This document shows, in pieces, positions 41,001 to 64,000 of a DNA stretch of 64,000 nucleotides; position 1 is the first letter of the stretch; every line of letters begins with the position of its first letter. The position numbers and the translations under genes are program-made. The DNA comes from Selaginella moellendorffii. Lineage: Eukaryota; Plantae; Lycopodiophyta. The stretch lies in NCBI RefSeq assembly GCF_000143415.4, contig NW_003314328.1:647889-711888 (forward strand), written 5' to 3'. Below the pieces are notes generated by a model. The model saw nothing but the letters and a program-made list of their open reading frames with translations, ran no database searches and was not told the DNA's origin.

Positions 41001-41453
41001 TGGTGTTTGCAAAGGGAGATCCCCGTGTCGCGGCGCTGTACGACGAGCTTTTGGTTCCCAAAGAGCTGCTGCCATTTGGAGACCACTTGAGGCAAAAGTA
41101 CGAAGAGACAAAGGAGCTGCTGCTCAAGGTACGTGAATCCATTTTCGAGCTTTTGGATTTGGATGCGATGGCTGGAAAGGAGCTTGCAGGTGGCGGGACA
41201 CAGCGAGCTTTTGGCCGGGAATCCGATATTAAAGCAGCGGCTGAGCCTTCGCGAGCCATTCATAACTCCGCTCAACGTACAGCAGGCTTTCACGCTCAAG
41301 AAGCTGAGGCAGCAGAGCTCGAGGATCTTTGTGGAGCTGCCGGTGGCGGAGGTGGTGGCGTCGAGAGCCACGGCGGAGGTGGCGGCTGGAATTCACGACT
41401 CGCTCATCCTCACCATGAAGGGAATCGCGGCTGGCATGCAAAACACTGGCTAG
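38020..41453 (+). CDS. PPC: Phosphoenolpyruvate carboxylase, plant type
   Basis: [43 protein letters not shown] and [12 protein letters not shown] motifs, and C-terminal GMQNTG. About 10 exons. Confidence 0.97.
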
Positions 41454-41481
41454 ACTTACTATTCTTTTCTTGGTGAATGAT

Positions 41482-42480
41482 CTACAAAATATATTTCCCT
41501 TTCATATTTGATCTCCTATGCTTCACATTTATGGGATCACAAAGTTTCACATTTATGGGATCATACAAAGCCTTGGGTGTTTTGCAATCCTCCCACACCT
41601 TCTCGTCCAGATTGTAACAAAATTCTTGCGAGCTCGTGTCTCCATCTTCCTCACACTCGGCCGGGGTAAAAGCACGAAAGCACAGGTAGCTTTTCTTCGA
41701 CCTGAAATCGAAATGCTGCCGAATGTATGAGACACATATCTCGTCAGCGATGACCTTTTCAGCCTCCAAACGTATTTCGTCTCTTGTAATATCCCAAATT
41801 TTGATCTTTCCTTCGAGATCCTCATCCTCGGTTGCCACCACAAAAAGTTTCTTCTCCCAGACTAGAAGATGGGCTTGCCCTCGCATCCCAATCACAGATA
41901 AATCCCTAAACAAGAACTCACAAGTTGTGGTATCATAGATTGTCAAGCTCTCTTTATCGATGTTGATCGAGACCACTTTGTCGTCGAAAACCACTGGGGT
42001 TGATGCCAAGCTCCGAGGCAAATCCTTTTCCTCCACCCAGCAAGATTGCCCACGGGAGAATGTCCAGACCCGGTTATGAAACCCCCATGCCACAAGTTTG
42101 TAGCATCCGTCATCACCTTTGATACAAACGCTATCAAACTGCACCATCTCGTCCTGGACCTCGGGGATTGTTTCCCAGCTACCAAGAAAAGGATTTCCAA
42201 TGTAGTATCGCTTGTTGTGTGCGGCAATCACTAGGTTATCTCGAAAGGTGGCGGAGTACATTTCATGTCCTCCCCAATGCATAACCGCGGTGCTAGAGTC
42301 CATGATGATCGCATCCCATGAAATCACGCCACTGTCAGAAAAGAGCTCCGTGAAACTTGGTAAGTTTACGAGCTTCCTCCAATGTTTGCATACGCTCCTC
42401 ACCCTGATAACGCCTGAAATAGGAAGCCTTAGAAAGATGGCTTCTAGAACCTCTTCTGGCAGGCACAAGATCCTCTTCAT
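41482..42480 (-). CDS. Single-exon F-box protein with beta-propeller-like C-terminus
   Basis: LPEEVLEAIFLRLPISGVIRVRSVCKHWRKLV F-box. IGNPFLGSWETIPE resembles F-box-associated repeats. ATG at 42480. Confidence 0.85.
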   Translation of the reverse strand: MKRILCLPEEVLEAIFLRLPISGVIRVRSVCKHWRKLVNLPSFTELFSDSGVISWDAIIMDSSTAVMHWGGHEMYSATFRDNLVIAAHNKRYYIGNPFLGSWETIPEVQDEMVQFDSVCIKGDDGCYKLVAWGFHNRVWTFSRGQSCWVEEKDLPRSLASTPVVFDDKVVSINIDKESLTIYDTTTCEFLFRDLSVIGMRGQAHLLVWEKKLFVVATEDEDLEGKIKIWDITRDEIRLEAEKVIADEICVSYIRQHFDFRSKKSYLCFRAFTPAECEEDGDTSSQEFCYNLDEKVWEDCKTPKALYDPINVKLCDPINVKHRRSNMKGKYIL

Positions 42481-44495
42481 TATTGAATGGTACCCTAACA
42501 ATCTTTACTTCGTCTTTATATATAACCAAGATTACCTTTTCGAGATAGCGTAAACCATGGTTATCATAAAATAAGATCCGAATATTCGCACATAAAATCC
42601 GGTTGGACTATGATAGAGTGGGGGTTATAAATCTTTGCACTCCTAGATGCAGCTGTGTTGGTTGAGGGGTGGTTAAAAAGTGAGGAGATTTCCAGCTGAA
42701 AGTAACAAGCATTAAAAAAGTTGTAACAAAATGAAACTAAATCTTACCATTCTTGATAAACTGTCAATCTCCAACTGTTTGTAACTGCCATCACATGTCG
42801 TTTCTTTTATATATATATATTCCGTTTTCAGAATTCTTGTGTATGAATTGCTGAGCTTGCATCGGTCAGGAAAGGCAGGGATTTGCATTGGACTGGAAGA
42901 CAGCAATCTAAACAAAACACGCAAGCATGCGCACAAACAGTGTTGTGGGGGCTGCAAGCGCAAATCAATCGATTCAATGAAAACCCTTGAAGCATCATCC
43001 GGTCTTTAATAATTCATTCCAATGTGACAAATCCCGCGAAGATATACACATCGTTCCACATATTCTAGCCTAAACGCACTTATGCTCTTGATTCTATCTG
43101 TCCGTGGAACGTGGGAAACTTCAGTGTGTGTTTGGATGGAACTCCCTGGCTCTTTGCAAATTGCCAGAAAGGCTGCCAATACAAATAAAAAAGTAGGATG
43201 TTGATAGAGTGAAAATGAGTGCTGCCATGCAATGCAATGCTCATGACAACCTAGCGATTATTATTCCCTTGCCTTCCATTCTTCCCAAATCACAATTCTT
43301 TTCAGTCTCGCAAAATCTCTCAATCCATTCTTTCCATCCCCAAGTTGGTACAAAAGCAAAGATTCCCCCCTTTCCATTCTCTCCTTTATTTTTTGTTGCT
43401 TGTCACCGACTGTGTGACAATAGTATGAAGAGATATCGAAAAAATATGTGCTTGGGGATTGGTCCCGTGGACCCATGGGCGGTGCCGGCGGGCCCACCAA
43501 CACGGTCCTCCCTGTCAGCATTGCTGACGTGTGACGGGTCGACTGTTTCCTTTCGTCCCAGGCGCTTTCCAGTTGGGGCATATAGTTGTGCCCATCAACC
43601 TTTTCTTTTTAATCAAAAGGGCGCGATTTCATACTAGAATATAATTTCATGGTTTCTAAAGTGATATTGCGATTCCATGGGCTGGAAATGCAAAGATTCC
43701 ACATGGTTTTAGAGGTTTTCGTAGAGATGGGATGGATTAGGTTAGCAGACTTTTTGGGTGCGAACGGCTAAGGCCTTCACATGGGGCCCTCGTGGCAATT
43801 CCAACACGAATTCTAGTGGCCTTTCTTTTTTCTGAAAATGAGTATTATGCGCTATACAGTGACGGAATATTCGTTGTACTGGATACGATATATATATGCG
43901 CCTTGCTTGAGGAGCTGGAGGTTTCTCTCGGTTTTTTTGATTGATCCATTGAGCGCGCTCGCGAGAGAGGAAAGGCGAGGAAGAAATCGATTAGGTTCTT
44001 CGGTGGCGAGAGAGATCCGGTAGCTCTCGCTTTGGATCGTTGGTCAAGGTTGTGAAGTGGTCGAAGGGAGTTTATGTGCATTCTTCCTGTTGGTTTTGGT
44101 CCGTCTGTGTGGTGGAGTGTATCGTCTGTGCTCTGCATTTTTTAGGAGCCAGGTCTATCTTGATCCACCGCTGGAAATTCTTTGATCCGCGATTGCGCTG
44201 CCTCGAGGCATCGCTCGCGCCAGTTTTGCTTTTTGCATATATCTTTCTTTTCCCTCCTGGGATTGTTTGACAGACCCCGGGGTTTTGCGTTTCGATTTTG
44301 TGCATAGTCGCGTCGAGAGGGATAAAGCTTCCAAGAAAATCGAAAAAAGAAAACATTTCGCCTTCGTGAGATTGATAGTGAGTCTGAGATCGATTTCGAT
44401 CGAATCGATCCAAGTCTAGTATTCTAGTGTGCATAAACTCGCTCGTCCCAATCCCAATTTTGCTGTGTTGTATATTTTGCTTTGTTCTTAACATC

Positions 44496-44589
44496 ATGGG
44501 GAAGTGTTCTAGCAAAGAACGTGTTGGAAAAGCAATGGTCTCCAAGATCAATGCCGTCCAGAAATCTTCGGGGGCTTCGAGCTCGAATG

Positions 44590-44620
<31 letters not shown>

Positions 44621-47600
44621 ATCCAACACAAAGCCTCAGGTATGGATCATTCGGAAAACTTCTCCTTTCTCTCATTCCTTGTGTATCTCCAGTCCATTCC
44701 AAGCTCGAGTGGTAGCACCAGGGTCCAGGTACGATCAAGCCTTAAAAGACAATTTGGTTGATTCATAAAACATACTTCCAGGACAACAATTCTCCCAAGA
44801 ATGTTGGGGTGGTGGTGCCACCAATCTCCATCCCTGCCCCTCCCGCCCCGGCTGTAGGCTCAAATATCCAACGAGGAGGCCCCGGCTCGGTGTCGGACAG
44901 ATTCCACGATGCACAAGAAGAACTCCCCGACTTCCCCACGCTCGACGCCCAAGGCAACGTCCCACCCGAGGAGCACCCAACTCCAAAGATGGGCTCCTCT
45001 TACAAGCAGCCATCCTCGTCGTCCCCAGCGTCGTCTCCCCAGGAAGTGAAAAAGATCCATTCCTACGCATACGTGGTGGCCCAAGCGCCACCATCCGCAA
45101 GTAAGTTGAGCTCGAGTTCTTCGTGTCCAGGTAAGTCGTCTAACCTCGAGGTCCTTAGCAGTAGTAATAGTAGCGCTGGTAGTTTCGGTAGAAGCCAAAG
45201 CCTTGAGACGTCTAGTAGAGCTAGCGAGACAAAGTTTTCTCACACAACCACCAGAACACCATCGAAAACTCCAGAAACCGTCGTGAAGCCCGAGTTAGTT
45301 TCGACTCAAACACCAAGTGCTAAGCCCGATCCTTACAAATCCGACTCGAAATATGCCAAGCCTGCTTCTACAACCAAGCTAGCTCCTGAATCAAAAACCA
45401 AAAGTGTTGAGACCATGAAGCCTGCCCCGGACACCAAAGGTAAGCCCATTAGTAGCAAAGGTAACAAGCCGCCTCCTCCGGTGCAAGAGAAGGCCTCACC
45501 GAAAGCCAAGTCTCCGCCTAAGGCCAAGGCTTCCCCGACGCCAGTAAGAGTTACAGAGCCTGCGATGCAAAACCGCAAAGAAGAGAAAGCTGCCGGCGTT
45601 TCTCGTCGTGGCTTTGTTCTCGAGGACTGGGAACTTGTCTCCAAAGCCACTGAAACTCCGGACGACAAACAAAAGGTGAGTGACATCTTTTTCGAGATCT
45701 GCTTATATAACTTTGATGAACCAGGCATCAAGAACAGCAAATACAGAGACCACAAAAGCTGGGCCGGATAGGAAAGCAGTGGATAGTCTAGGAAAACCAG
45801 GTGGCGCGATCAGGCCTCAAGCGGGATCTGATGTATCATCAGAGAACCGAGTAGGAAAACAGGCAGCCCCCCCGGAGATTATAAAAGAACAGAAGGCCAG
45901 GGAGATCCCAGCGATGGAGAAACGTTCATCACAATCTAAAGCAGCAACAGCAAAAATAGTCAAAGCTACACCGGAAGTGCATGTGCCGGGAAGTGATAAC
46001 TCCATGTCGAGCTTCAGTGGACCGTCTGATTCATCAAAAGTTGGCGAGGAAAAACAGCATGCTCAAAAGCGTGAAGCTGCTCAAGTTGGCGCTGGAACGA
46101 AGAGAAATTCGGGACAGGAGGAGCCAGTAAACATTGCGAAAGAAGTACCAGATAATGCTACAATCAAGGATGTTACAAGGGATTTTGACAAGAAAACTCC
46201 ACAAGGAGCTCAGAACAAACGAAAAGATGATACGCCAAAGCAGGAAGCTAAGATAGATCAGATCGGCATTGGCACATCGGTAACAACTTTAGGAGAGATA
46301 CAAGAGAAACCACAAGCAATTGCCGCTCTGCCTAAGGAGGAAAAGGCACCTGTTCCCGATCAGAAGCCACAGGAAGCGCCAATATCAGATACAGTGGCAG
46401 ATGCCACATCCAAATCAAATCTTGATGTGCCTAGGGACAAACCGCAGCACCGGGCGATAGCTCCATATGCGATAGTGAAGCGGGAAAATGATGATTCGTG
46501 CGTGGAGGAACAGCCCGCTGGCAAATTCACAATGAAATTGGAAGACAACGTAGAGAAGCCAGCCGTTTCTGAGCATGAGCTCAAGCTACCAGACAATTTT
46601 TACGGTGCTCAGACAATTGCAGCTGCACAGAACGTACAAGTCGCGACTCCAGCAGAAATGCAAGTGCTATTGGACATATATCCTGAGGCTGTGCAAAGAA
46701 ATGAGGAGCAGACTGCAAGTGACGTTTCCCTGAAGGATCCAAAAGCCCCTGTACCTTTGGAATACTTAGCAGGACTAGTCGAACACGTCATATGTACCAC
46801 AACAGAGGAACATGAAAACGTGACACCGCCCCAAATAAAGAGAAGTGCGCGTCCCAACCAAGGAAAGGACAACAGAAAAGAAAGAGACGAAACGGTTTCG
46901 GGCCTGCCCGTTCCCAAAGTCGTACAAGAAACATCGAAGGCCGTCGAGTTACAACAAGCCACGCCTTCAGAAGCCATGCCTGTGGTTAAAAAGAAGGCTG
47001 CAAGGGAGGCAATACCCGAGCCTCCAGCAGCAATGCCTCCAACCCCGGAAAACAAGGAAAAAGAGAGCCATGACGCAGCCAAGTTGGCTGTAGAGCATGC
47101 TGAGGCCGAGGAGAGTGATCCCAAGGCGATTGTGAAGGAGGGAGAAAAGGTGGCAGACCAGGAAATTAAGAGGTCCCCGCTGGATTGCACACACGCGACA
47201 GATTCTGTGGTGAAGGAGACAGCAGCTCCTGCCAGTGACGATTTTTCTCAGCTAGTGGCACAGGAAAAGAAAGTCAGGGAGCTACTGGTTTCTGAACGTG
47301 AGCTCGAGCTGCCTGTCCCAGTAGTCTCGCAGCACGCACAGCAGCACGTCAAGGAGCAGACACAAGCTGTGCCAGAGGATGCAAAGGATGCCAAGGAGGT
47401 GGAACAAGCCGAGCCAATAACAGCTCTAGCAGCAATGCCCGTGGCCAACGAGGTCTTGCCCGCAAAAGACAAACCTGAGAAGGCCAAGGTGGCTGTGGAC
47501 GACCAGGTGGAGCATTCTGACACCCAGGAGAGTGCTCCAGAGCTGATCGTGGAGGAGGAAGAAAAGGTGGCGGAGCCACAGATTGAGAAAGCCGTGCCGG

Positions 47601-50600
47601 ATTCCACGCAGGCGATGGATCCCATGGTAGAGGACACACTGGCAGCAGCTGCCAGTCTAGACATTCCCAAGCAAGTAGCAGAGGAGGTAATCAATATCGA
47701 GGAGCCAAAGCAAGTTTCTGAACGTGAGCACCACCTGCTCGTCCCAGTAGAAAAAGTCCCACAGCCCACAGGCAAGGCTGTTAAGGAGCCACAGGCTGTG
47801 CCTAAGGCAGTTCCTGAGGCTGCAAAGGAGGTGGAACTGGCCGAGCCACCTGCAGCTCCAGCAGCAATCCCTGCAGTCAACAATGTATTTCCCGCACACA
47901 ACGAAATCAAGGTGGAAGAGAGAATTGAGACGGCCGACGTGGCTGTGGAAGACAAGGAGGAGAATGCTGACGACAAGGAGAGTGTTCCAGATGCGATCGT
48001 AAAGGAGGGAGAAAAGTTGGCAGAGCCAGATATTGAGAGTCCTGTGCCAGAATACATGCATGCAACGGAACCCGCGCTGGAGACACTGCTAGCAGCCCCA
48101 TCAAGAGAAGACATTCACGAGCAAGTGCCAGAGGAGGAAATCAAAGTCAAGGAGGCACAACAAGTTTCCAAACGTGAGATCAAAGAAGATGTCCAGCAGG
48201 CTGCGGACGAGGCTTTCCAAAAGAAAGGCGATGAGCCTGAGCCTGAGGCCGTGCCTGAGAAACCTGACGAGGCTGCTAAGAAGGTGGAACTGGCTGAGCC
48301 AGTCGCAGCTCCAGCAGCAACGTCCGCGGTGAATGACGTCTTGCCCACACAGCACGAAATCAAGGAGGAAGAGAGCATAGAGCCAGCTGCTCTGCACGAC
48401 CAGGTGGAGAATGGTGAGGCCGGGGAGAGTGCTCCAGACGCGATCGTGGAGGAGCCAGGGATCGAGAGTGCTCTGCTGGATTCCATGCATGCGGCAGATC
48501 CCGTTCTGGAGGACACACACGCAGCAGCTCCTGCCAGTGAACACATTAACAGGCAAGTGGAATACGAGGAAATCAAAGTCGAGAAGCCACAACAACATTC
48601 CAAACGCAAGGTGAAGCTGCCCGTCCCAGTAGAAGAACTCCCACACACAACGAACAAAGCCGTCCAGGAGCCAGAGGCTGTTCCAAAGCCAGAGGCCGTG
48701 CCTGAGGCTGCTGAAGAGGCTGCCAAGGAGGTGGAACCGGCCGAGCCAGTCGTAGCTCAAGTACCAACTGCCACAGTGGATGACGTCTTACCCACACACG
48801 AAGAAATCAAGGAGGAAGAGAGCATAGAGCCGGCCAAGGTGGCTGTGGATGACCAGGTGGAGAATTTCAAGCCCAGGGAGAGTGCTTCAGTCGCGATCCT
48901 GCAGGAGGGAGAAAAGTTGGCGGTGCCAGAGATCGAGAGTGCTGCTCCAGATTCCATCCATGTGACAGATACCACAGTGGATGACACACAGCGAGCATCT
49001 CCTGCCAGTGAGGACATTCACGACAACGTGGAAGAGGAGCAAACCAAAGTCGAGGTGATGCATGAAGTTTCCGAACGCGAGGTTGAGCTTGCTGTCCCAG
49101 TAGAAGAACTCCCACCGTCAGGGAACGAAGAAGTCCAGGAGCCACAGCCTGTGCTTGACGCCGTTCCCGAGACAGAGGCCGTGCCTGAGGCTTCTGAAGA
49201 GGATGCCAAAGAGGTGCAACCAGCCGAGCCAGTTGTAGCTCAAGTACCAACCGCGAAAGTGCATGACGTCTTACCCGCACACGAGGAAATCAAGGAGGAA
49301 GAGAGCATAGAGCCGGCCAAGGTGGCTGTGGATGACCAGGTGGAGAATGTCGAGCCCAGGGAGAGTGCTTCAGTCGCGATCCTGCAGGAGGGAGAAAAGT
49401 TGGCGGTGCCAGAGATCGAGAGTGGTGCACTGGATTCCATGCATGCGACAGATGCCACAGTGGACGACACACAGCGAGCACCTCCTGCCAGTGAGGACAT
49501 TCACGAGAACGTGGAAGAGGAGCAAACAAAAGTCCAGGTGCCACATGAAGTTTCCGAACGCGAGGTCGAGCTTGCTGTCCCGGTAAAAGAACTCCCAGAG
49601 TCGGGGAATGAAGAAGTCCAGGACCCACAGCCTGTGCTTGAGGCCGTTCCCGAGCTTGAGGCCGTGCCTGAGGCTGCTGAAGAGGCTGTCAAGGAGGTGG
49701 AACCGGCCGAGCCAGTCGTAGCTCAAGTACCAACTACCACAGTGGATGACGTTTTACCCACACACGAGGAAATCAAGGAGGAAGAGAGCATAGAGCCGGC
49801 CAAGGTGGCTGTGGATGACCAGGTGGAGAATGTCGAGCCCAGGGAGAGTGCTTCAGTCGCGATCCTGCAGGAGGGAGAAAAGTTGGCAGTGCCAGAGATC
49901 GAGAGTGGTGCACCGGATTCCATGCATGCGACAGATGCCACAGTGGACGACACACAGCGAGCACCTCCTGCCAGTGAGGACATTCACGACAACGTGGAAG
50001 AGGAGCAAAGCAAAGTCGAGGTGCAGCATGAAGTTTCCGAACGCGAGGTCGAGCTTGCTGTCCCAGTAGAAGAACTCCCACAGTCGGGGAACGAAGAAGT
50101 CCAGGACCCACAGCCTGTGCTTGAGGCCGTTCCCGAGCTTGAGGCCGTGCCTGAGGCTGCTGAAGAGGCTGTCAAGGAGGGGGAACCGGCCGAGCCAGTC
50201 GTAGCTCAAGTACCAACTACCACAGTGGATGACGTTTTACCCACACACGAGGAAATCAAGGAGGAAGAGAGCATAGAGCCGGCCAAGGTGGCTGTGGATG
50301 ACCACGTGGAGAATGTCGAGCCCAGGGAGAGTGCTTCAGTAGCGATCCTGCAGGAGGGAGAAAAGTTGGCGGTGCCAGAGATCGAGAGTGGTGCTCCAGA
50401 TTCCATCCATGTGACAGATGCCACAGTGGACGACACACAGCGAGCATCTCCTGCCAGTGAGGACATTCACGACAACGTGGAAGAGGAGCAAAGCAAAGTC
50501 GAGGTGCAGCATGAAGTTTCCGAACGCAAGGTCGAGCTTGCCGTCCCAGTAGAAGAACTCCCACAGTCAGGGAACGAAGAAGTCCAGCAGCCACAGCCTG

Positions 50601-53600
50601 TGCTTGAGGCCGTTCCCGAGACAGAGGCCGTGCCTGAGGCTTCTGAAGAGGCTGCCAAAGAGGTGCAACCAGCCGAGCCAGTTGTAGCTCAAGTACCAAC
50701 CGCGAAAGTGGATGACGTCTTACCCGCACACGAGGAAATCAAGGAGGAAGAGAGCATAGAGCCGGCCAAGGTGGCTGTGGATGACCAGGTGGAGAATGTC
50801 GAGCCCAGGGAGAGTGCTTCAGTCGCGATCCTGCAGGAGGGAGAAAAGTTGGCAGTGCCAGAGATCGAGAGTGGTGCACCGGATTCCATGCATGCGACAG
50901 ATGCCACAGTGGACGACACACAGCGAGCACCTCCTGCCAGTGAGGACATTCACGAGAACGTGGAAGAGGAGCAAAGCAAAGTCGAGGTGCAGCATGAAGT
51001 TTCCGAATGCGAGGTCGAGCTTGCTGTCCCAGTAGAAGAACTCCCACCGTCAGGGAACGAAGAAGTCCAGGAGCCACAGCCTGTGCTTGAGGCCGTTCCC
51101 GAGACAGAGGCCGTGCCTGAGGCTTCTGAAGAGGATGCCAAAGAGGTGCAACCAGCCGAGCCAATTGTAGCTCAAGTACCAACTGCGAAAGTGGATGACG
51201 TCTTACCCGCACACGAGGAAATCAAGGAGGAAGAGAGCATAGAGCCGGCCAAGGTGGCTGTGGATGACCAGGTGGAGAATGTCGAGCCCAGGGAGAGTGC
51301 TTCAGTCGCGATCCTGCAGGAGGGAGAAAAGTTGGCGGTGCCAGAGATCGAGAGTGGTGCACTGGATTCCATGCATGCGACAGATGCCACAGTGGACGAC
51401 ACACAGCGAGCACCTCCTGCCAGTGAGGACATTCACGACAACGTGGAAGAGGAGCAAAGCAAAGTCGAGGTGCAGCATGAAGTTTCCGAACGCGAGGTCG
51501 AGCTTGCTGTCCCAGTAGAAGAACTCCCACAGTCGGGGAACGAAGAAGTCCAGGAGCCACAGCCTGTGCTTGAGGCCGTTCCCGAGACAGAGGCCGTGCC
51601 TGAGGCTTCTGAAGAGGATGCCAAAGAGGTGCAACCAGCCGAGCCAGTTGTAGCTCAAGTACCAACCGCGAAAGTGGATGACGTCTTACCCGCACACGAG
51701 GAAATCAAGGAGGAAGAGAGCATAGAGCAGGCCAAGGTGGCTGTGGATGACCAGGTGGAGAATTTCAAGCCCAGGGAGAGTGCTTCAGTCGCGATCCTGC
51801 AGGAGGGAGAAAAGTTGGCGGTGCCAGAGATCGAGAGTGCTGCTCCAGATTCCATCCATGTGACAGATGCCACAGTGGACGACACACAGCGAGCATCTCC
51901 TGCCAGTGAGGACATTCACGACAACGTGGAAGAGGAGCAAACCAAAGTCGAGGTGCAGCATGAAGTTTCCGAACGCAAGGTCGAGCTTGCCGTCCCAGTA
52001 GAAGAACTCCCACAGTCAGGGAACGAAGAAGTCCAGCAGCCACAGCCTGTGCTTGAGGCCGTTCCCGAGACAGAGGCCGTGCCTGAGGCTTCTGAAGAGG
52101 CTGCCAAAGAGGTGCAACCAGCCGAGCCAGTTGTAGCTCAAGTACCAACTGCGAAAGTGGATGACGTCTTACCCGCACACGAGGAAATCAAGGAGGAAGA
52201 GAGCATAGAGCCGGCCAAGGTGGCTGTGGATGACCAGGTGGAGAATGTCGAGCCCAGGGAGAGTGCTTCAGTCGCGATCCTGCAGGAGGGAGAAAAGTTG
52301 GCAGTGCCAGAGATCGAGAGTGGTGCACCGGATTCCATGCATGCGACAGATGCCACAGTGGACGACACACAGCGAGCACCTCCTGCCAGTGAGGACATTC
52401 ACGACAACGTGGAAGAGGAGCAAAGCAAAGTCGAGGTGCAGCATGAAGTTTCCGAACGCGAGGTCGAGCTTGCTGTCCCAGTAGAAGAACTCCCACAGTC
52501 GGGGAACGAAGAAGTCCAGGAGCCACAGCCTGTGCTTGAGGCCGTTCCCGAGACAGAGGCCGTGCCTGAGGCTTCTGAAGAGGATGCCAAAGAGGTGCAA
52601 CCAGCCGAGCCAGTTGTAGCTCAAGTACCAACCGCGAAAGTGGATGACGTCTTACCCGCACACGAGGAAATCAAGGAGGAAGAGAGCATAGAGCAGGCCA
52701 AGGTGGCTGTGGATGACCAGGTGGAGAATTTCAAGCCCAGGGAGAGTGCTTCAGTCGCGATCCTGCAGGAGGGAGAAAAGTTGGCGGTGCCAGAGATCGA
52801 GAGTGCTGCTCCAGATTCCATCCATGTGACAGATGCCACAGTGGACGACACACAGCGAGCATCTCCTGCCAGTGAGGACATTCACGACAACGTGGAAGAG
52901 GAGCAAACCAAAGTCGAGGTGCAGCATGAAGTTTCCGAACGCAAGGTCGAGCTTGCCGTCCCAGTAGAAGAACTCCCACAGTCAGGGAACGAAGAAGTCC
53001 AGCAGCCACAGCCTGTGCTTGAGGCCGTTCCCGAGACAGAGGCCGTGCCTGAGGCTGCTGAAGAGGCTGTCAAGGAGGTGGAACCGGCCGAGCCAGTCGT
53101 AGCTCAAGTACCAACCGCGAAAGTGGATGACGTTTTACCCACACACGAGGAAATCAAGGAGGAAGAGAGCATAGAGCCGGCCAAGGTGGCTGTGGATGAC
53201 CAGGTGGAGAATGTCGAGCCCAGGGAGAGTGCTTCAGTCGCGATCCTGCAGGAGGGAGAAAAGTTGGCAGTGCCAGAGATCGAGAGTGGTGCACCGGATT
53301 CCATGCATGCGACAGATGCCACAGTGGACGACACACAGCGAGCACCTCCTGCCAGTGAGGACATTCACGACAACGTGGAAGAGGAGCAAAGCAAAGTCGA
53401 GGTGCAGCATGAAGTTTCCGAACGCGAGGTCGAGCTTGCTGTCCCAGTAGAAGAACTCCCACAGTCGGGGAACGAAGAAGTCCAGGACCCACAGCCTGTG
53501 CTTGAGGCCGTTCCCGAGCTTGAGGCCGTGCCTGAGGCTGCTGAAGAGGCTGCCAAAGAGGTGCAACCAGCCGAGCCAGTTGTAGCTCAAGTACCAACCG

Positions 53601-56600
53601 CGAAAGTGGATGACGTCTTACCCGCACACGAGGAAATCAAGGAGGAAGAGAGCATAGAGCCGGCCAAGGTGGCTGTGGATGACCAGGTGGAGAATGTCGA
53701 GCCCAGGGAGAGTGCTTCAGTCGCGATCCTGCAGGAGGGAGAAAAGTTGGCAGTGCCAGAGATCGAGAGTGGTGCACCGGATTCCATGCATGCGACAGAT
53801 GCCACAGTGGACGACACACAGCGAGCACCTCCTGCCAGTGAGGACATTCACGAGAACGTGGAAGAGGAGCAAAGCAAAGTCGAGGTGCAGCATGAAGTTT
53901 CCGAACGCGAGGTCGAGCTTGCTGTCCCAGTAGAAGAACTCCCACCGTCAGGGAACGAAGAAGTCCAGGAGCCACAGCCTGTGCTTGAGGCCGTTCCCGA
54001 GACAGAGGCCGTGCCTGAGGCTTCTGAAGAGGATGCCAAAGAGGTGCAACCAGCCGAGCCAGTTGTAGCTCAAGTACCAACTGCGAAAGTGGATGACGTC
54101 TTACCCGCACACGAGGAAATCAAGGAGGAAGAGAGCATAGAGCCGGCCAAGGTGGCTGTGGATGACCAGGTGGAGAATGTCGAGCCCAGGGAGAGTGCTT
54201 CAGTCGCGATCCTGCAGGAGGGAGAAAAGTTGGCGGTGCCAGAGATCGAGAGTGGTGCTCCAGATTCCATCCATGTGACAGATGCCACAGTGGACGACAC
54301 ACAGCGAGCACCTCCTGCCAGTGAGGACATTCACGACAACGTGGAAGAGGAGCAAAGCAAAGTCGAGGTGCAGCATGAAGTTTCCGAACGCGAGGTCGAG
54401 CTTGCTGTCCCAGTAGAAGAACTCCCACCGTCAGGGAACGAAGAAGTCCAGCAGCCACAGCCTGTGCTTGAGGCCGTTCCCGAGACAGAGGCCGTGCCTG
54501 AGGCTTCTGAAGAGGATGCCAAAGAGGTGCAACCAGCCGAGCCAGTTGTAGCTCAAGTACCAACCGCGAAAGTGGATGACGTCTTACCCGCACACGAGGA
54601 AATCAAGGAGGAAGAGAGCATAGAGCCGGCCAAGGTGGCTGTGGATGACCAGGTGGAGAATGTCGAGCCCAGGGAGAGTGCTTTAGTCGCGATCCTGCAG
54701 GAGGGAGAAAAGTTGGCAGTGCCAGAGATCGAGAGTGCTGCACTGGATTCCATGCATGCGACAGATGCCACAGTGGACGACACACAGCGAGCATCTCCTG
54801 CCAGTGAGGACATTCACGACAACGTGGAAGAGGAGCAAACCAAAGTCGAGGTGCAGCATGAAGTTTCGGAACGCGAGGTTGAGCTTGCTGTCCCAGTAGA
54901 AGAACTCCCACCGTCAGGGAACGAAGAAGTCCAGGAGCCACAGCCTGTGCTTGAGGCCGTTCCCGAGACAGAGGCCGTGCCTGAGGCTTCTGAAGAGGAT
55001 GCCAAAGAGGTGCAACCAGCCGAGCCAGTTGTAGCTCAAGTACCAACCGCGAAAGTGGATGACGTCTTACCCGCACACGAGGAAATCAAGGAGGAAGAGA
55101 GCATAGAGCCGGCCAAGGTGGCTGTGGATGACCAGGTGGAGAATGTCGAGCCCAGGGAGAGTGCTTCAGTCGCGATCCTGGACGAGGGAGAAAAGTTGGC
55201 TGTGCCAGAGATTGAGAGTGCTGCACCGGATTCCATGCATGCAACAGATGCCACCCTGAAGGACACACAGCGAGCATCTTCTGCCAGTGAAGACATTCAC
55301 GAGAATGTGGAAGAGGAGCAAACCAACGTCGCAGTGCAACATGAAGTTTCCCAACGCGAGGTTGAGATTGCCATACCAGTAGAGGGAAGCCCGCAGCTCG
55401 TGAACGAAGCCGTCCAGGAGCCACAGCCTGTGCCTGAGGCCGTTCCCGAGCATGAGGCCGTGCCTGAAGCTGCCGAAGAGGCTGCCATGGAGGTGGAACC
55501 GGCGGAGCCAGTCGTAGCTCAAGTACCAACTGCCACAGTGGATGACGTCTTACCCACACACGAGGAAATCAATGAGGAAGAGAGCATAGAGCCGGCCAAG
55601 GTGGCTCTGGATGACAAGGTAGAGAATGTCGAGCCCCGGGAGAGTGCTTCAGTCGCGATCCTGGACGAGGGAGAAAAGTTGGCTGTGCCAGAGATTGAGA
55701 GTGCTGCACCGGATTCCATGCATGCAACAGATGCCACCCTGAAGGACACACAGCGAGCATCTTCTGCCAGTGAAGACATTCACGAGAATGTGGAAGAGGA
55801 GCAAACCAACGTCGCAGTGCAACATGAAGTTTCCGAACGCGAGGTTGAGATTGCCATAGCAGTAGAGGGACTCCCGCAGTTGGTGAACGAAGCCGTGCAG
55901 GAGCCACAGCCTGTGCCTGAGGCCATTCCCGAGCATGAGGCCGTGCCTGAAGCTGCCGAAGAGGCTGCCATGGAGGTTGAACCGGCGGAGCCAGTCGTAG
56001 CTCAAGAACCAACTGCCACAGTGGATGACGTCTTACCCACACACGAGGAAATCAATGAGGAAGAGAGCATAGAGCCGGCCAAGGTGGCTGTGGATGACCA
56101 CGTGGAGAATGTCAAGCCCAGGGAGAGTGCTTCAGTCGCGATCCTGGACGAGGGAGAAAAGTTGGCGGTGCCAGAGACTGAGAGTGCTGCACCGGATTCC
56201 ATGCATGCAACAGATGCCACCCTGGAGGACACACAGCGAGCATCTTCTGCCAGTGAAGACATTCACGAGAATGTGGAAGAGGAGCAAACCAACGTCGCAG
56301 TGCCACATGAAGTTTCCGAACGCGAGGTTGAGATTGCCATACCAGTAGAGGGACTCCCGCAGTTGGTGAACGAAGCCGTGCAGGAGCCACAGCCTGTGCC
56401 TGAGGCCGTTCCCGAGCATGAGGCCGTGCCTGAAGCTGCCAAAGAGGCTGCCATGGAGGTGGAACCGGCGGAGCCAGTCGTAGCTCAAGTACCAACTGCC
56501 ACAGTGGATGACATCTTACCCGCACACGAGGAAATCAAGGAGGAAGAGAGCATAGAGCCGGCCAAGGTGGCTGTGGATGACCACGTGGAGAATGTCAAGC

Positions 56601-59600
56601 CCAGGGAGAGTGCTTCAGTCGCGATCCTGGACGAGGGAGAAAAGTTGGCGGTGCCAGAGACTGAGAGTGCTGCACCGGATTCCATGCATGCGACAGATGC
56701 CACCTTGGAGGACACACAGCGAGCATCTTCTGCCAGTGAAGACATTCACCAGAATGTGGAAGAGGAGAAAACCAACGTCGCAGTGCCACATGAAGTTTCC
56801 GAACGCGAGGTTGAGATTCCCGTCCCAGTAGAAGTACTCCTGCAGTCAGGGAACGAAGAAGTCCAGGAGCCACAGCATGCGCTTGGGACCGTTCCCGAGC
56901 CAGAGGCCGTGCCTGAGGCTTCTGAAGAGGCTGCCAACGAGGTGGAGTCGGCCGAGCCAGTCGTAGCTCAAGAACCAACCGCCACAGTGGATGACATCTT
57001 ACCCGCACACGAGGAAATCAAGGAGAAAGAGAGCATAGAGCCGGCCAAGGTGGCTCTGGATGACCACGTGGAGAATGTCGAGCCCAGGGAGAATGCTTCA
57101 GTCGCGATCCTGGACGAGGGAGAAAAGTTCGCGGTGCCAGAGATCGAGAGTGGTGCAGCGGATTCCATGCATGCGACAGATGCCACAGTGGAGGACACAC
57201 AGCGAGCATCTTCTGCCACTGAAGAAATTCACGAGAACGGGGAAGAGGAGCAAAGCAATGTCGAAGTGCCACATGAAGTTTCCGAAGGCAAATTCGATCT
57301 TGCTGTCCCAGTAGAAGAACTCCCACAGTCGGGGAACGAAGAAGTCCAGGAGCCACAGCTTGTGCTTGAGGCCGTGCCTGAGGCTTCTGAAGAGGCTGTC
57401 AAGGAGGTGGAACCGGCCGAGCCAGTCGTAGCTCAAGTACCAACCGCCACAGTGGATGACATCTTACCCGCACATGAGGAAATCAAGGAGGAAGAGAGCA
57501 TAGAGCCGGCCAAGGTGGCTCTGGATGACAAGGTGGAGAATGTCGAGCCCCGGGAGTGTGCTTTAGTCGCGATCCTTGACGAGGGAGAAAAGTTGGCGGT
57601 GCCAGAGATTGACAGTGCTGCACCGGATTCCATGCATGCGACAGATGCCACCGTGGAGGACACACAGCGAGCATCTTCTGCCAGTGAAGACATTCACCAG
57701 AACGTGGAAGAGGAGAAAACCAACGGTTACGTGCCACATCAAGTATCCGAACGCGAGGTTGAGATTCCGATCCCAGTAGAAGGACTCCCGCAGTCGGGGA
57801 ACGAAGACGTCCAGGAGCCAGAGCATGCGCTTGAGGCCGTTCCCGAGCCGGAGGCCGTGCCTGAGGCTTCTGAAGAGGCTGCCAACGAGGTGGAGTCGGC
57901 CGAGCCACTCGTAGCTCAAGTACCAACCGCCACAGTGGATGACGTCTTACCCGCACACGAGGAAATCAAGGAGAAAGAGAGCATAGAGCCGGCCAAGGTG
58001 GCTCTGGATGACCACGTGGAGAATGTCGAGTCCAGGGAGAGTGCTTCAGTCGGGATCCTGGACGAGGGAGAAAAGTTGGCGGTGCCAGAGATTGACAGTG
58101 CTGCACCGGATTCCATGCATGCAACAGATGCCACCCTGGAGGACACACAGCGAGCATCTTCTGCCAGTGAAGACATTGACGAGAACGTGGAAGACGAACA
58201 AACCAACGTCGAGGTGCCACATTTAGTTTCCGAACGCAAGGTCAAGCTTGCCGTCCCAGTAGAAGAACTCCCACAGTCAGGGAACGAAGAAGTCCAGGAG
58301 CCACAGCCTGTGCTTGAGGCCGTTTCCGAGCTTGAGGCCGTGCCTGAGGCTTCTGAAGAGGCTGTCAAGGAGGTGGAACCGGCCGAGCCAGTCGTAGCTC
58401 AAGTACCAACCGCCACAGTGGATGACATCTTACCTGCACACGAGGAAATCAAGGAGGAAGAGAGCATAGAGCCGGCCAAGGTGGCTCTGGATGACAAGGT
58501 GGAGAATGTCGAGCCCCGGGAGTGTGCTTCAGTCGCGATCCTGCAGGAGGGAGAAGAGTTGGCGGTGCCAGAGATCGAGAGTGGTGCACCGGATTCCATG
58601 CATGCGACAGATGCCACAGTGGAGGACACACAGCGAGCATCTTCTGCCACTGAAGAAATTCACGAGAACGGGGAAGAGGAGCAAAGCAATGTCGAAGTGC
58701 CACATGAAGTTTCCGAAGGGAAATTCGATCTTGCTGTCCCAGTAGAAGAACTCCCACAGTCGGGGAACGAAGAAGTCCAGGAGCCACAGCCTGTGCTTGA
58801 GGCCGTGCCTGAGGCTTCTGAAGAGGCTGTCAAGGAGGTGGAACCGGCCGAGCCAGTCGTAGCTCAAGTACCAACCGCCACAGTGGATGACATCTTACCC
58901 GCACATGAGGAAATCAAGGAGGAAGAGAGCATAGAGCCGGCCAAGGTGGCTCTGGATGACAAGGTGGAGAATGTCGAGCCCCGGGAGAGTGCTTCAGTCG
59001 CGATCCTGCAGGAGGGAGAAAAGTTGGCGGTGCCAGAGATTGACAGTGCTGCACCGGATTCCATGCATGCGACAGATGCCACCGTGGAGGACACACAGCG
59101 AGCATCTTCTGCCAGTGAAGACATTCACGAGAATGTGGAAGAGGAGCAAACCAACGTCGCAGTGCTACATGAAGTTTCCCAACGCGAGGTTGAGATTGCC
59201 ATACCAGTAGAGGGACGCCCGCAGCTCGTGAACGAAGCCGTCCAGGAGCCACAGCCTGTGCCTGAGGCCGTTCCCGAGCATGAGGACGTGCCTGAAGCTG
59301 CCGAAGAGGCTGCCATGGAGGTGGAACCGGCGGAGCCAGTCGTAGCTCAAGTACCAACTGCCACAGTGGATGACATCTTACCCACACACGAGGAAATCAA
59401 GGAGGAAGAGAGCATAGAGCCGGCCAAGGTGGCTGTGGATGACCACGTGGAGAATGTCGAGCCCAGGGAGAGTGCTTCAGTCGCGATCCTGCAGGAGGGA
59501 GAAAAGTCGGCAGTGCCAGAGATGGAGAGTGGTGCACCGGATTCCATGCATGCAACCGATGCCACAGTGGACGACACACAGCGAGCACCTCCTGCCAGTG

Positions 59601-62600
59601 AGGACATTCACGAGAACGTGGAAGAGGAGCAAAGCAAAGTCGAGGTGCAGCATGAAGTTTCCGAACGCGAGGTCGAGCTCGCTGTCCCAGTAGAAGAACT
59701 CCCACAGTCGGGGAACAAAGAAGTCCAGGAGCCACAGCATGTGCTTGAGGCCGTTCCCGAGACAGAGGCCGTGCCTGACGCTGCTGAAGAGGCGGCCAAG
59801 GAGGTGCAACCGGCCGAGCCAGTTGTAGCTCAAGTACCAACCGCGACAGTGGATGACGTCTTACCCGCACACGAGGAAATCAAGGAGGAAGAGAGCATAG
59901 AGCCGGCCAAGGTGGCTGTGGAAGACCACGTGGAGAATGTCGAGCCCAGGGAGAGTGCTTCAGTCGCGATCCTGCAAGAGGGAGAAAAGTTGGCAGTGCC
60001 AGAGATGGAGAGTGGTGCACCGGATTCCATGCATGCAACAGATGCCACAGTGGACGACACACAGCGAGCACCTCCTGCCAGTGACGACATTCACGAGAAC
60101 GTGGAGGAGGAGCAAAGCAAAGTCGAGGTGCAGCATGAAGTTTCCGAACGCGAGGTCGTGCTTGCTGTCCCAGTAGAAAAACTCCCACAGTCGGGGAACA
60201 AAGAAGTCCAGGAGCCACAGAATGTGCTTGAGGCCGTTTTCGAGACAGAGGCCGTGCCTGAGGCTTCTGAAGAGGCTGCCAAAGAGGTGCAACCAGCCGA
60301 GCCAGTCGTAGCTCAAGTACCAACCGCCACAGTGGATGACATCTTACCCACACACGAAGAAATCAAGGAGGAAGAGAGCATAGAGCCGGCCAAGGTGGCT
60401 CTGGATGACAAGGTACAGAAGGTCGAGCCCCGGGAGAGTGCTTCAGTCGCGATCCTGGACGAGGGAGAAAAGTTGGCGGTGCCAGAGATTGACAGTGCTG
60501 CACCGGATTCCATGCATGCAACAGATGCCACCCTGGTGGACACACAGCGAGCATCTTCTGCCAGTGAAGACATTCACGAGAATGTGGAAGAGGAGCAAAC
60601 CAACGTCGCAGTGCTACATGAAGTTTCCCAACGCGAGGTTGAGATTGCCATACCAGTAGAGGGACGCCCGCAGCTCGTGAACGAAGCCGTCCAGGAGCCA
60701 CAGCCTGTGCCTGAGGCCGTTCCCGAGCATGAGGACGTGCCTGAAGCTGCCGAAGAGGCTGCCATGGAGGTGGAACCGGCGGAGCCAGTCGTAGCTCAAG
60801 TACCAACTGCCACAGTGGATGACATCTTACCCGCACACGAGGAAATCAAGGAGGAAGAGAGCATAGAGCCGGCCAAGGTGGCTGTGGATGACCACGTGGA
60901 TAATGTCAAGCCCAGGGAGAGTGCTTCAGTCGCGATCCTGGACGAGGGAGAAAAGTTGGCGGTCCCAGAGATCGAGAGTGCTGCACCGGATTCCATGCAT
61001 GCAACAGATGCCACCCTGGAGGACACACAGCGAGCATCTTCTGCCAGTGAAGACATTCACGAGAATGTGGAAGAGGAGCAAACCAACGTCGCAGTGGAAC
61101 ATGAAGTTTCCGAACGCGAGGTTGAGATTGCCATACTAGTAGAGGGACTCCCGCAGTTGGTGAACGAAGCCGTGCAGGAGCCACAGCCTGTGCCTGAGGC
61201 CGTTCCCGAGCATGAGGCGGAGCCTGAAGCTGCCGAAGAGGCTGCCATGGAGGTTGAACCGGCGGAGCCAGTCGTAGCTCAAGAACCAACTGCCACAGTG
61301 GATGACGTCTTACCCACACACGAGGAAATCAATGAGGAAGAGAGCATAGAGCCGGCCAAGGTGGCTGTGGATGACCACGTGGAGAATGTCAAGCCCAGGG
61401 AGAGTGCTTCAGTCGCGATCCTGGACGAGGGAGAAAAGTTGGCGGTGCCAGAGATTGAGAGTGCTGCACCGGATTCCATGCATGCAACAGATGCCACCCT
61501 GGAGGACACACAGCGAGCATCTTCTGCCAGTGAAGACATTCACGAGAATGTGGAAGAGGAGCAAACCAACGTCGCAGTGCCACATGAAGTTTCCGAACGC
61601 GAGGTTGAGATTGCCATACCAGTAGAGGGACTCCCGCAGTTGGTGAACGAAGCCGTGCAGGAGCCACAGCCTGTGCCTGAGGCCGTTCCCGAGCATGAGG
61701 CCGTGCCTGAAGCTGCCAAAGAGGCTGCCATGGAGGTGGAACCGGCGGAGCCAGTCGTAGCTCAAGTACCAACTGCCACAGTGGATGACATCTTACCCAC
61801 ACACGAGGAAATCAATGAGGAAGAGAGCATAGAGCCGGCCAAGGTGGCTGTGGATGTCCACGTGGAGAATGTCAAGCCCAGGGAGAGTGCTTCAGTCGCG
61901 ATCCTGGACGAGGGAGAAAAGTTGGCGGTGCCAGAGATTGACAGTGCTGCACCGGATTCCATGCATGCAACAGATGCCACCCTGGAGGACACACAGCGAG
62001 CATCTTCTGCCAGTGAAGACATTCACGAGAATGTGGAAGAGGAGCAAACCAACGTCGCAGTGCAACATGAAGTTTCCCAACGCGAGGTTGAGATTGCCAT
62101 ACCAGTAGAGGGAAGCCCGCAGCTCGTGAACGAAGCCGTCCAGGAGCCACAGCCTGTGCCTGAGGCCGTTCCCGAGCATGAGGCCGTGCCTGAAGCTGCC
62201 GAAGAGGCTGCCATGGAGGTGGAACCGGCGGAGCCAGTCGTAGCTCAAGTACCAACTGCCACAGTGGATGACGTCTTACCCACACACGAGGAAATCAATG
62301 AGGAAGAGAGCATAGAGCCGGCCAAGGTGGCTGTGGATGACCACGTGGAGAATGTCAAGCCCAGGGAGAGTGCTTCAGTCGCGATCCTGGACGAGGGAGA
62401 AAAGTTGGCGGTGCCAGAGATTGAGAGTGCTGCACCGGATTCCATGCATGCGACAGATGCCACCTTGGAGGACACACAGCGAGCATCTTCTGCCAGTGAA
62501 GACATTCACGAGAATGTGGAAGAGGAGCAAACCAACGTCGCAGTGCCACATGAAGTTTCCGAACGCGAGGTTGAGATTCCCGTCCCAGTAGAAGTACTCC

Positions 62601-64000
62601 TGCAGTCAGGGAACGAAGAAGTCCAGGAGCCACAGCATGCGCTTGGGACCGTTCCCGAGCCAGAGGCCGTGCCTGAGGCTTCTGAAGAGGCTGCCAACGA
62701 GGTGGAGTCGGCCGAGCCACTCGTAGCTCAAGAACCAACCGCCACAGTGGATGACATCTTACCCGCACACGAGGAAATCAAGGAGAAAGAGAGCATAGAG
62801 CCGGCCAAGGTGGCTCTGGATGACCACGTGGAGAATGTCGAGTCCAGGGAGAGTGCTTCAGTCGCGATCCTGGACGAGGGAGAAAAGTTGGCGGTGCCAG
62901 AGATTGACAGTGCTGCACCGGATTCCATGCATGCAACAGATGCCACCCTGGAGGACACACAGCGAGCATCTTCTGCCAGTGAAGACGTTCACGAGAACGT
63001 GGAAGAGGAGCAAGCGAACGTCGCGGTGCCACATCAAGTTTCCGAACGAGAGCTTGAGATTGCCGTCCCAGTAGAAGGACTCCCACAGTTGGTGAACGAA
63101 GAAGTCCAGCAGCCACAGCCTGTGCTTGAGGCCGTTCCCGAGACAGAGGCCGTGCCTGAGGCTTCTGAAGAGGCTGCCAAAGAGGTGCAACCAGCCGAGC
63201 CACTTGTAGCTCAAGTACCAACCGCGAAAGTGGATGACATCTTACCCACACACGAGGAAATCAAGGAGGAAGAGAGCATAGAGCCGGCCAAGGTGGCTGT
63301 GGATGACCACGTGGAGAATGTCGAGCCCAGGGAGAGTGCTTCAGTCGCGATCCTGCAGGAGGGAGAAAAGTTGGCGGTGCCAGAGATTGAGAGTGCTGCA
63401 CCGGATTCCATGCATGCGACAGATGCCACCCTGGAGGACACACAGCGAGCATCTTCTGCCAGTGAAGACATTGACGAGAACGTGGAAGAGGAGCAAACCA
63501 ACGTTGACGTGCCACATCCAGTATCCGAACGCGAGCTTGAGATTCCCATTCCAGTAGAAGGACTCCCGCAGTTGGGGAACATAGAAGTCCAGGAGCCAGA
63601 GCATGCGCTAGAGGCCGTTCTCGAGCTAGGGGCCGTGCCTGAGGCTTCTGAAGAGGCTCCCAAGGAGGTGGAACCGGCCGAGCCAGTCGTAGCTCAAGTA
63701 CCAACTGCCACAGTCGATGATGTCTTACCTGGACACGAGGAAATCAAGGAGGAAGAGAGCATAGAGCCGGCCAAGGTGGCTCTGGATGACCAGGTGGAGA
63801 ATGTCGAGCCCAGGGAGAGTGCTTCAGTCGCGATCCTGGATGAGGGAGAAAAGTTGGCGGTGCCAGAGATCGAGAGTGCTGCACCGGATTCCATGCATGC
63901 GACAGATGCCACCCTGGAGGACACACAGCGAGCATCTTCTGCCAGTGAAGACATTGACGAGAACGTGGAAGAGGAGCAAACCAACGTTGACGTGCCACAT
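44496..64000 (+). CDS. Giant acidic repeat protein (>6,400 aa, incomplete) with N-terminal MGKCSSK acylation motif
   Basis: Exons 44496-44639, 44693-44728, 44782-45675 and 45725->64000, all phase 0 GT-AG. Codon phase is the same at 45725, 48731 and 63962. The ORF track reports no closed ORF in this frame, consistent with no stop before the window end. Confidence 0.85.
44590..44619 (+). repeat. (AAC)n microsatellite encoding poly-Asn
   Basis: About 9-10 AAC units in exon 1 of the giant gene. Confidence 0.9.
48757..64000 (+). repeat. Coding tandem array of 483-bp units (two 465-bp variants), 31 complete units plus a partial one
   Basis: Unit starts recur every 483 bp (48757, 49240, 49723...63694), except the 465-bp units at 56968 and 58399. 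Degenerate precursor units lie at ~46900-48757. Confidence 0.98.

What the first reader, a model, noticed from the sequence alone, without database searches (positions are those of the whole stretch)
44496..64000. Giant titin/PEVK-like plant protein: one >18 kb exon of 161-aa acidic repeats
Seen: exon 45725->64000 stays in frame (>6,090 codons). It encodes >31 copies of AQVPTAKVDDVLPAHEEIKEEESIEPAKVAVDDQVENVEPRESASVAILQEGEKLAVPEIESGAPDSMHATDATVDDTQRAPPASEDIHENVEEEQSKVEVQHEVSEREVELAVPVEELPQSGNEEVQEPQPVLEAVPETEAVPEASEEDAKEVQPAEPVV. The unit is E/V/A/P-rich with almost no aromatics or Cys. Length variants are multiples of 3 (483 versus 465), which implies selection on the frame. The ORF track misses it because there is no stop in the window. 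Inference: a very large, disordered polyanionic protein (spacer, elastic element, Ca2+ buffer or desiccation/cytoskeletal scaffold) with no family I recognise.
Basis: partly seen in the sequence, partly recalled or inferred. Interest (0 to 1): 0.85.

Follow-up and report, generated by a model that had tools for sequence, protein, structure and literature searches.

The report
Giant acidic repeat protein of spikemoss
A spikemoss gene encodes an unfolded, strongly acidic protein of at least 6,449 residues with a probable lipid anchor at its start, and its repeat array has been rewritten separately on the plant's two chromosome copies while keeping frame, unit length and charge; it is unstudied and is not a titin.

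Summary
Observation confirmed. The + frame is stop-free from 45680 to the window end. The organism is Selaginella moellendorffii. The other haplotype's copy is public (XP_024540542 'titin, partial'; EFJ19067, 5,519 aa), and this scan noted what appears to be the same gene on another piece (s1-410769). A public model holds units 99-100% like this window's, so the array is not invented. Newly measured here: the two haplotypes are 99% identical in the head but 74% in the units, each array has its own homogenised unit set, and charge and frame are kept (dN/dS 0.53). Best reading: a membrane-anchored polyanionic brush selected for frame and composition more than sequence. It is not a titin/PEVK member. 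I found no relatives outside the species and no papers.

The parts
44496..44639 (+). Exon 1 (48 codons): start MGKCSSK (Gly2, Cys4, Ser6, Lys7; N-myristoylation plus S-acylation type), basic first 25 residues, poly-Asn tract
   Evidence: same start in public models
44693..44728 (+). Exon 2, 36-nt phase-0 micro-exon between two 53-nt GT-AG introns
   Evidence: present in XP_024540542 and EFJ19067
44782..45675 (+). Exon 3 (298 codons), Ser/Pro/Lys-rich basic disordered head; exons 1-3 are 99% identical between haplotypes
44899..44919 (+). FFAT-like core RFHDAQE (residues 100-106): matches F2, D4, A5, E7 of EFFDAxE; misses E1, F3 and an acidic flank
   Evidence: binding untested
45622..45639 (+). 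ATG8-interacting-motif-like EDWELV (residues 341-346), around the only Trp in 6,449 residues
   Evidence: binding untested
45676..45724 (+). Intron 3, 49 nt, GT-AG, phase 0
45725..46810 (+). Start of the giant exon: non-repetitive, near-neutral disordered segment (residues 359-720)
46811..48919 (+). About five decayed repeat units (33-72% aa to an array unit) with in-frame indels; the two tested pair with their counterparts on the other haplotype
48920..64000 (+). Homogenised array: 31 full units (29 x 483 nt; 465-nt units at 57131 and 58562) plus a partial one, continuing past the window; mosaic units of several subfamilies

Best explanation
A real, species-restricted gene for a giant intrinsically disordered protein. 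Shown: intact four-exon frame, basic head, polyanionic array, no transmembrane stretch, no fold. Inferred: Gly2 is myristoylated and Cys4 S-acylated, and with the basic start this holds the protein on the cytosolic face of a membrane, most likely the plasma membrane. The head carries any specific binding motifs. The array (at least 1,626 Asp/Glu per chain) forms a long self-repelling brush that works by length and charge, as a spacer or crowding element that also binds cations weakly, not by sequence-specific binding of each unit. The array turns over by unequal crossing-over and gene conversion within each chromosome, so each haplotype has its own unit set; selection mainly removes stops, frameshifts and loss of charge.
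For: Frame open for 6,107 codons; public models have the same splice pattern. dN/dS among units is 0.53 in frame versus 1.04 and 1.49 in the shifted frames. A context-matched permutation gives 62 synonymous changes against 51 expected (P about 0.02) and a stop deficit (P about 0.03). 13 of 15 indels in the decayed units are multiples of 3, and the other two sum to -6. Units differ by 26% between haplotypes, with 14 near-fixed, mostly non-conservative changes (mean BLOSUM62 -0.43), yet charge per residue stays at -0.22 versus -0.24 and Pro at 9-11%. AlphaFold on two units: pLDDT 43, no secondary structure. Highest 19-residue hydropathy 1.27. Residues 1-25 have pI 10.2. The start fits N-terminal Gly acylation with a nearby Cys as reviewed in PMC3927097.
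Against: No RNA or peptide evidence obtained here. Acylation is read from the motif; no predictor or assay was run. Selection is weak and the counts ignore shared ancestry of units. One antisense frame shows the same synonymous excess, as expected when third positions coincide, so only the long open frame sets the strand. Constant charge could partly reflect recent common ancestry of the units. No orthologue exists to test conservation over time.
Confidence: 0.5

Rival explanations
1. Membrane-contact or autophagy adaptor: the acylated head links a membrane to ER VAP27 through the FFAT-like core about 100 residues from the anchor, and recruits ATG8 through EDWELV in the head and DDDSWEEV in the tail. 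The array is a long spacer between the two ATG8 motifs.
For: The only Trp of the window's protein sits in an acid-flanked W-x-x-V motif (shuffle P about 0.003-0.006). The other haplotype's tail has two more W-x-x-V motifs. The FFAT-like core is the only [FY][FYH][DE] match in the protein. An earlier scan note reports a similar E-x-F-H-D peptide in two other giant acidic proteins of this genome (s1-344493, unchecked).
Against: The patterns were chosen after seeing the motifs, so the P values are optimistic. With the published-style xLIR pattern (recalled from memory) P is only 0.1-0.2. The FFAT-like core lacks E1, F3 and an acidic flank, and I could not obtain the scoring matrix. Such motifs give many false positives (PMC8666691).
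Confidence: 0.17
2. Mainly a membrane-bound, high-capacity, low-affinity Ca2+ or cation store: an oversized analogue of PCaP1/PCaP2 and other Glu-rich plant cation-binding proteins.
For: At least 1,626 acidic against 436 basic residues; array pI 4.05. PCaP1 is held at the plasma membrane by N-myristoylation and binds Ca2+ (PMC6471457).
Against: No VEEKK motif (two VEEEK only), no EF-hand-like loop, no DREPP or other Pfam match. Any polyanion binds cations, so this need not be the selected role.
Confidence: 0.12
3. Nearly neutral runaway expansion: the function lies in the head and tail, and the array grew by unequal crossing-over. The frame is kept only because the tail is needed or because premature stops destroy the mRNA.
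For: dN/dS of 0.53 is weak. Unit sequences were replaced between haplotypes. Copy number differs (about 25 units in EFJ19067, more than 31 here), though the public model may be incomplete. No relatives outside the species.
Against: Both haplotypes keep arrays of over 4,000 residues with near-equal charge; a synonymous excess exists beyond stop avoidance.
Confidence: 0.15
4. Titin-PEVK-like elastic spring stretched between two anchors.
For: Disorder; P+E+V+K 48%; automatic RefSeq names 'titin'; a possible beta hairpin in the tail could self-associate (low confidence).
Against: No PPAK, no Ig/Fn3, little Lys; no second membrane anchor or CaaX in the tail. The RefSeq names are probably composition-driven (inference).
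Confidence: 0.04
5. Assembly artefact, or a non-coding satellite that happens to be open in one frame.
For: The copy number here was not checked with reads.
Against: Units differ from each other (86-99.6%). The public model XP_024523736 holds units 99.4% and 100% identical to window units. The other haplotype has an open array joined to the same head and a tail. The majority unit has 1-7 stops in each of the other five frames.
Confidence: 0.02

Closest known systems
SELMODRAFT_444278 / EFJ19067.1 / D8S8M4 and XP_024540542.1, XP_024540543.1, XP_024523876.1, XP_024523736.1 (S. moellendorffii)
   Same: Same gene. The first three are on the other haplotype's 1,658,784-bp contig; XP_024523736 carries this window's unit type.
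   Different: Unstudied: no paper in the library names the four ids searched. RefSeq splits the gene into partial models named 'titin'. I found no full public model of this window's haplotype.
AHNAK and AHNAK2 (vertebrates)
   Same: Gene and protein layout: small 5' exons, one exon of about 17 kb, a central array (24 x 165 aa in AHNAK2), 600-700 kDa, membrane-associated (PMC10682155).
   Different: No PDZ domain and no sequence similarity detected; this protein has an acylation-type start and is far more acidic. Analogy only.
PCaP1/MDP25 and PCaP2/MAP18 (plant DREPP-type cation-binding proteins)
   Same: Myristoylation-type start followed by a hydrophilic Glu/Val/Pro-rich region.
   Different: PCaPs are roughly 30-fold shorter (own knowledge) and use VEEKK motifs, which are absent here; no DREPP match.
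RBB1 (At5g40450) and its angiosperm relatives
   Same: Giant plant-specific protein with no domains, conserved only among close relatives over most of its length (PMC4411111).
   Different: RBB1 relatives share a 75-aa C-terminal region; a search with the other haplotype's tail found no protein outside S. moellendorffii. RBB1 is cytosolic.
Titin PEVK segment
   Same: Disorder; rich in Pro, Glu and Val.
   Different: No PPAK repeats, little Lys, no Ig, Fn3 or kinase domains.
MARCKS / BASP1 / GAP-43 type acylated acidic disordered proteins (animals; own knowledge)
   Same: N-terminal fatty acylation plus a long acidic Ala/Glu/Pro-rich unfolded chain.
   Different: Those are about 250-330 aa with no long tandem array; no homology shown here.

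Membership tests
Titin / PEVK | Ig and Fn3 domain arrays and a kinase domain | tested here: not met
   No Pfam match in head, units or tail
Titin / PEVK | PPAK repeats and about 70% P+E+V+K (figure from own knowledge) | tested here: not met
   0 PPAK; P+E+V+K 48%; Lys 3.5%
AHNAK / periaxin | N-terminal PDZ domain and AHNAK-type central repeats | tested here: not met
   No Pfam match; no animal hits
AHNAK / periaxin | One giant exon carrying a 128-165-aa tandem array after small exons | tested here: met
   Exon over 18 kb, 161-aa units; layout only
PCaP / DREPP | N-terminal Gly2 myristoylation motif | tested here: inconclusive
   MGKCSSK present in both haplotypes; modification not assayed
PCaP / DREPP | DREPP domain and VEEKK motifs | tested here: not met
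RBB1-like giant plant proteins | Conserved 75-aa C-terminal region | tested here: inconclusive
   The tail search found only S. moellendorffii proteins, but RBB1 itself was not compared directly, the search has a length filter, and the window's own tail is outside the window
FFAT-motif VAP partners | EFFDAxE core with an upstream acidic tract | tested here: inconclusive
   4 of 6 specified core positions match; flank GPGSVSD is barely acidic; scoring matrix not available
ATG8-binding selective autophagy receptors | Acid-flanked W/F/Y-x-x-L/I/V in disorder that binds ATG8 | tested here: inconclusive
   Motifs present; binding not testable here
Concertedly evolving coding tandem array | Units more alike within an array than between homologous arrays, with edge units escaping | tested here: met
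   Within 84.5% and 89.0%, between 73.7%; window units on one side of a 99/96 branch; edge units pair across haplotypes; positional pairing of the first units rejected

The most novel reading that the evidence does not exclude
Selaginella has evolved its own AHNAK-sized (over 690 kDa), lipid-anchored polyanionic protein whose head links a membrane to ER (VAP27) and autophagy (ATG8) machinery, possibly one of a small lineage-specific class of giant acidic proteins sharing an F-H-D motif, and the two haplotypes of one plant make versions whose repeat sequences differ by a quarter.
Probability: 0.15. Interest if true: 0.75.

Novelty: new variant of a known kind. Interest (0 to 1): 0.48.

Why it matters
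If made in full, this would be an unusually long plant protein, and no folded domain is apparent in it. It shows a land plant arriving at the AHNAK-type layout independently. The locus is also a natural experiment. Two haplotypes with 99% identical heads carry arrays that differ by 26% yet keep charge, Pro content and unit length, which allows a direct test of whether composition rather than sequence is selected in giant disordered proteins. Interest is capped because the gene is already in databases, this scan noted the counterpart before, concerted evolution of coding arrays is a known process, and no function is shown.

Tried and rejected
The spliced model was searched exon by exon by reference; the joined window protein was used only in local scripts and not sent to a search tool. 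Pfam on exons, units and the other haplotype's tail: nothing significant. Homologue searches: the giant exon against long proteins gave none (the length filter hides the 1,559-aa cluster representative); exon 3 against 1.84 billion representatives gave one hit, same species; units plus tail gave the same species only. The tail model is low confidence (pLDDT 39, a possible beta hairpin) with no PDB match. No Rfam hit in the gene. No internal sub-repeat in the unit, and no strong splice donor in the array. The two 'stops' counted in frame come from placing single changes on the majority codon; the real units have none. The third clade test did not finish and is not used. Rejected: artefact, non-coding satellite, titin membership, and the 483/465 length argument as independent evidence.

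Full report
1. Observation. The + frame from 45680 has no stop to the window end (6,107 codons) and the window contains no N. TRF reports one 483-bp array, 48447-64000, 32.3 copies. Aligning one unit along the frame gives 31 full units at 48920-63856, a partial one at the edge, and about five decayed units from 46811. Twenty-nine units are 483 nt and two are 465 nt. The two short ones are 98% identical and share one 18-nt deletion, so they count as one event.

2. Gene model. Exons 44496-44639, 44693-44728, 44782-45675 and 45725 onward are joined by GT-AG, phase-0 introns of 53, 53 and 49 nt. The joined frame gives 6,449 residues without a stop, about 694 kDa, as a lower bound. A search of exon 3 against 1.84 billion representatives returned one protein: XP_024540542.1, 'titin, partial', Selaginella moellendorffii. 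It has the same start and the same three junctions, including the micro-exon. Its cluster also holds EFJ19067.1 (SELMODRAFT_444278), a 5,519-aa model with head, about 25 units and a tail of roughly 120-200 aa. These are predictions.

3. Not an artefact. Units are 86-99.6% identical in DNA, mean 91%. The public model XP_024523736.1, on a 17.5-kb contig, holds units 99.4% and 100% identical to window units 11 and 6. The majority unit has 1-7 stops in each of the other five frames and none in this one. The exact copy number remains unchecked.

4. Selection. Pooled dN/dS among units is 0.53 in the coding frame against 1.04 and 1.49 in the shifted frames; variant alleles number 64, 49 and 87 at codon positions 1, 2 and 3. 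Permuting the 200 variants among sites of the same base and methylation context gives 62 synonymous changes against 51 expected (P about 0.02) and a stop deficit (P about 0.03). Thirteen of 15 indels in the decayed units are multiples of three, and the other two sum to -6. This is real but weak purifying selection, and the counts do not correct for shared ancestry.

5. Two haplotypes, two arrays. The reference genome covers two haplotypes about 98.5% identical (PMC8839085). The F-box gene 2 kb upstream has two public copies: one 100% identical to the window's on a 1,081,329-bp contig, and one (96.5% over aligned columns) on a contig of 1,658,784 bp, the same length as the contig carrying EFJ19067. 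I infer that the window and EFJ19067 are the two haplotype copies of one locus; adjacency on that contig was not seen directly. Protein identity between the copies falls along the gene: 99.2% in exons 1-3, 96-97% in the next 500 residues, 94, 94 and 90% in the decayed units, then 78 and 72% on entering the array. Array units are 84.5% identical within the window, 89.0% within EFJ19067 and 73.7% between them, with 14 near-fixed differences. In a tree of 62 units, the 31 window units lie on one side of a 99/96 branch, while the two edge units tested pair across haplotypes. Forcing the first units of the two arrays together is rejected (p-AU far below 0.001). Four-gamete conflicts rise from 14% for close sites to 34% for distant ones, and units 23, 24 and 30 are mosaics. 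This is the signature of concerted evolution within each chromosome (inference from established theory).

6. Anatomy. Residues 1-25 are basic (pI 10.2) and begin MGKCSSK; exons 1-3 have pI 9.7. Net charge then falls to -0.22 per residue in the array (pI 4.05). There is no transmembrane stretch or CaaX box. All segments in the window are on the unfolded side of the charge-hydropathy boundary. AlphaFold with a 26-row alignment of two-unit fragments gives pLDDT 43 and no secondary structure. Despite the 26% difference and mostly non-conservative fixed changes, charge per residue (-0.22 and -0.24) and Pro content (9% and 11%) match between haplotypes. The head has an FFAT-like core, RFHDAQE, and an ATG8-motif-like EDWELV around the only Trp. 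The other haplotype's tail has DDDSWEEV and a possible beta hairpin of low confidence. These motifs are leads only.

7. Mechanism. Most likely (0.5): a doubly acylated, membrane-anchored chain whose array acts as a polyanionic brush or spacer, selected for frame and composition. Frame, composition, disorder and array turnover are shown; acylation, localisation and role are inferred. Rivals: ER-contact or autophagy adaptor (0.17), near-neutral expansion (0.15), cation store (0.12), elastic spring (0.04), artefact (0.02). The first and the cation-store readings are not exclusive.

8. Comparison. It is built like AHNAK2 (one exon of about 17.5 kb, 24 x 165 aa; PMC10682155) and anchored like PCaP1, but it fails the domain tests for both families and for titin. 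RBB1 membership is unlikely but was not directly tested. No relative outside the species was found; these searches have length and clustering limits. No paper in the library names the models.

9. Verdict. Real, in databases but unstudied, and noted before by this scan on another piece of the genome. The haplotype-specific replacement of the array with charge conserved is the main addition here. New variant of a known kind; interest 0.48.

Noticed in passing
public protein P0005 (XP_024523736.1), residues about 600-852: After three window-type 161-aa units it continues with shorter units of about 126 aa that lack a 35-aa block. This is either a further in-frame length variant beyond the window or a predicted intron.
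   Followed up: no
public protein P0003/P0004, last 134 residues: The tail has a Gly run, a Val/Thr-rich stretch modelled as a beta hairpin plus a third strand (pLDDT about 50) and four Trp; no PDB match.
   Followed up: partly
window 44590-44620: An (ACA)10 microsatellite encodes poly-Asn in exon 1; it is three residues shorter in the other haplotype.
   Followed up: partly
window 41482-42501 (-): Single-exon F-box gene, SELMODRAFT_424469 type. Its only other hit is the other haplotype's copy, 96.5% identical with a 14-residue length difference.
   Followed up: partly
window about 38255-41476 (+): Phosphoenolpyruvate carboxylase gene (PF00311); exon structure and intactness not checked.
   Followed up: no
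window 37852-37923 (-): tRNA-Cys(GCA).
   Followed up: no
window 26989-29941 (-): PPR gene split over several ORFs in different frames; it may be broken or spliced.
   Followed up: no
window 30568-36132: Pyruvate dehydrogenase E1-beta-like gene (30568-31539, -), a second F-box-like gene (from 32211, +) and an intronless, GC-rich MATE transporter (34507-36132, -).
   Followed up: no
window 24978-25493: 220-bp tandem repeat, 2.4 copies, inside the Fic-family gene noted earlier by the scan (s1-351354, s1-351521).
   Followed up: no
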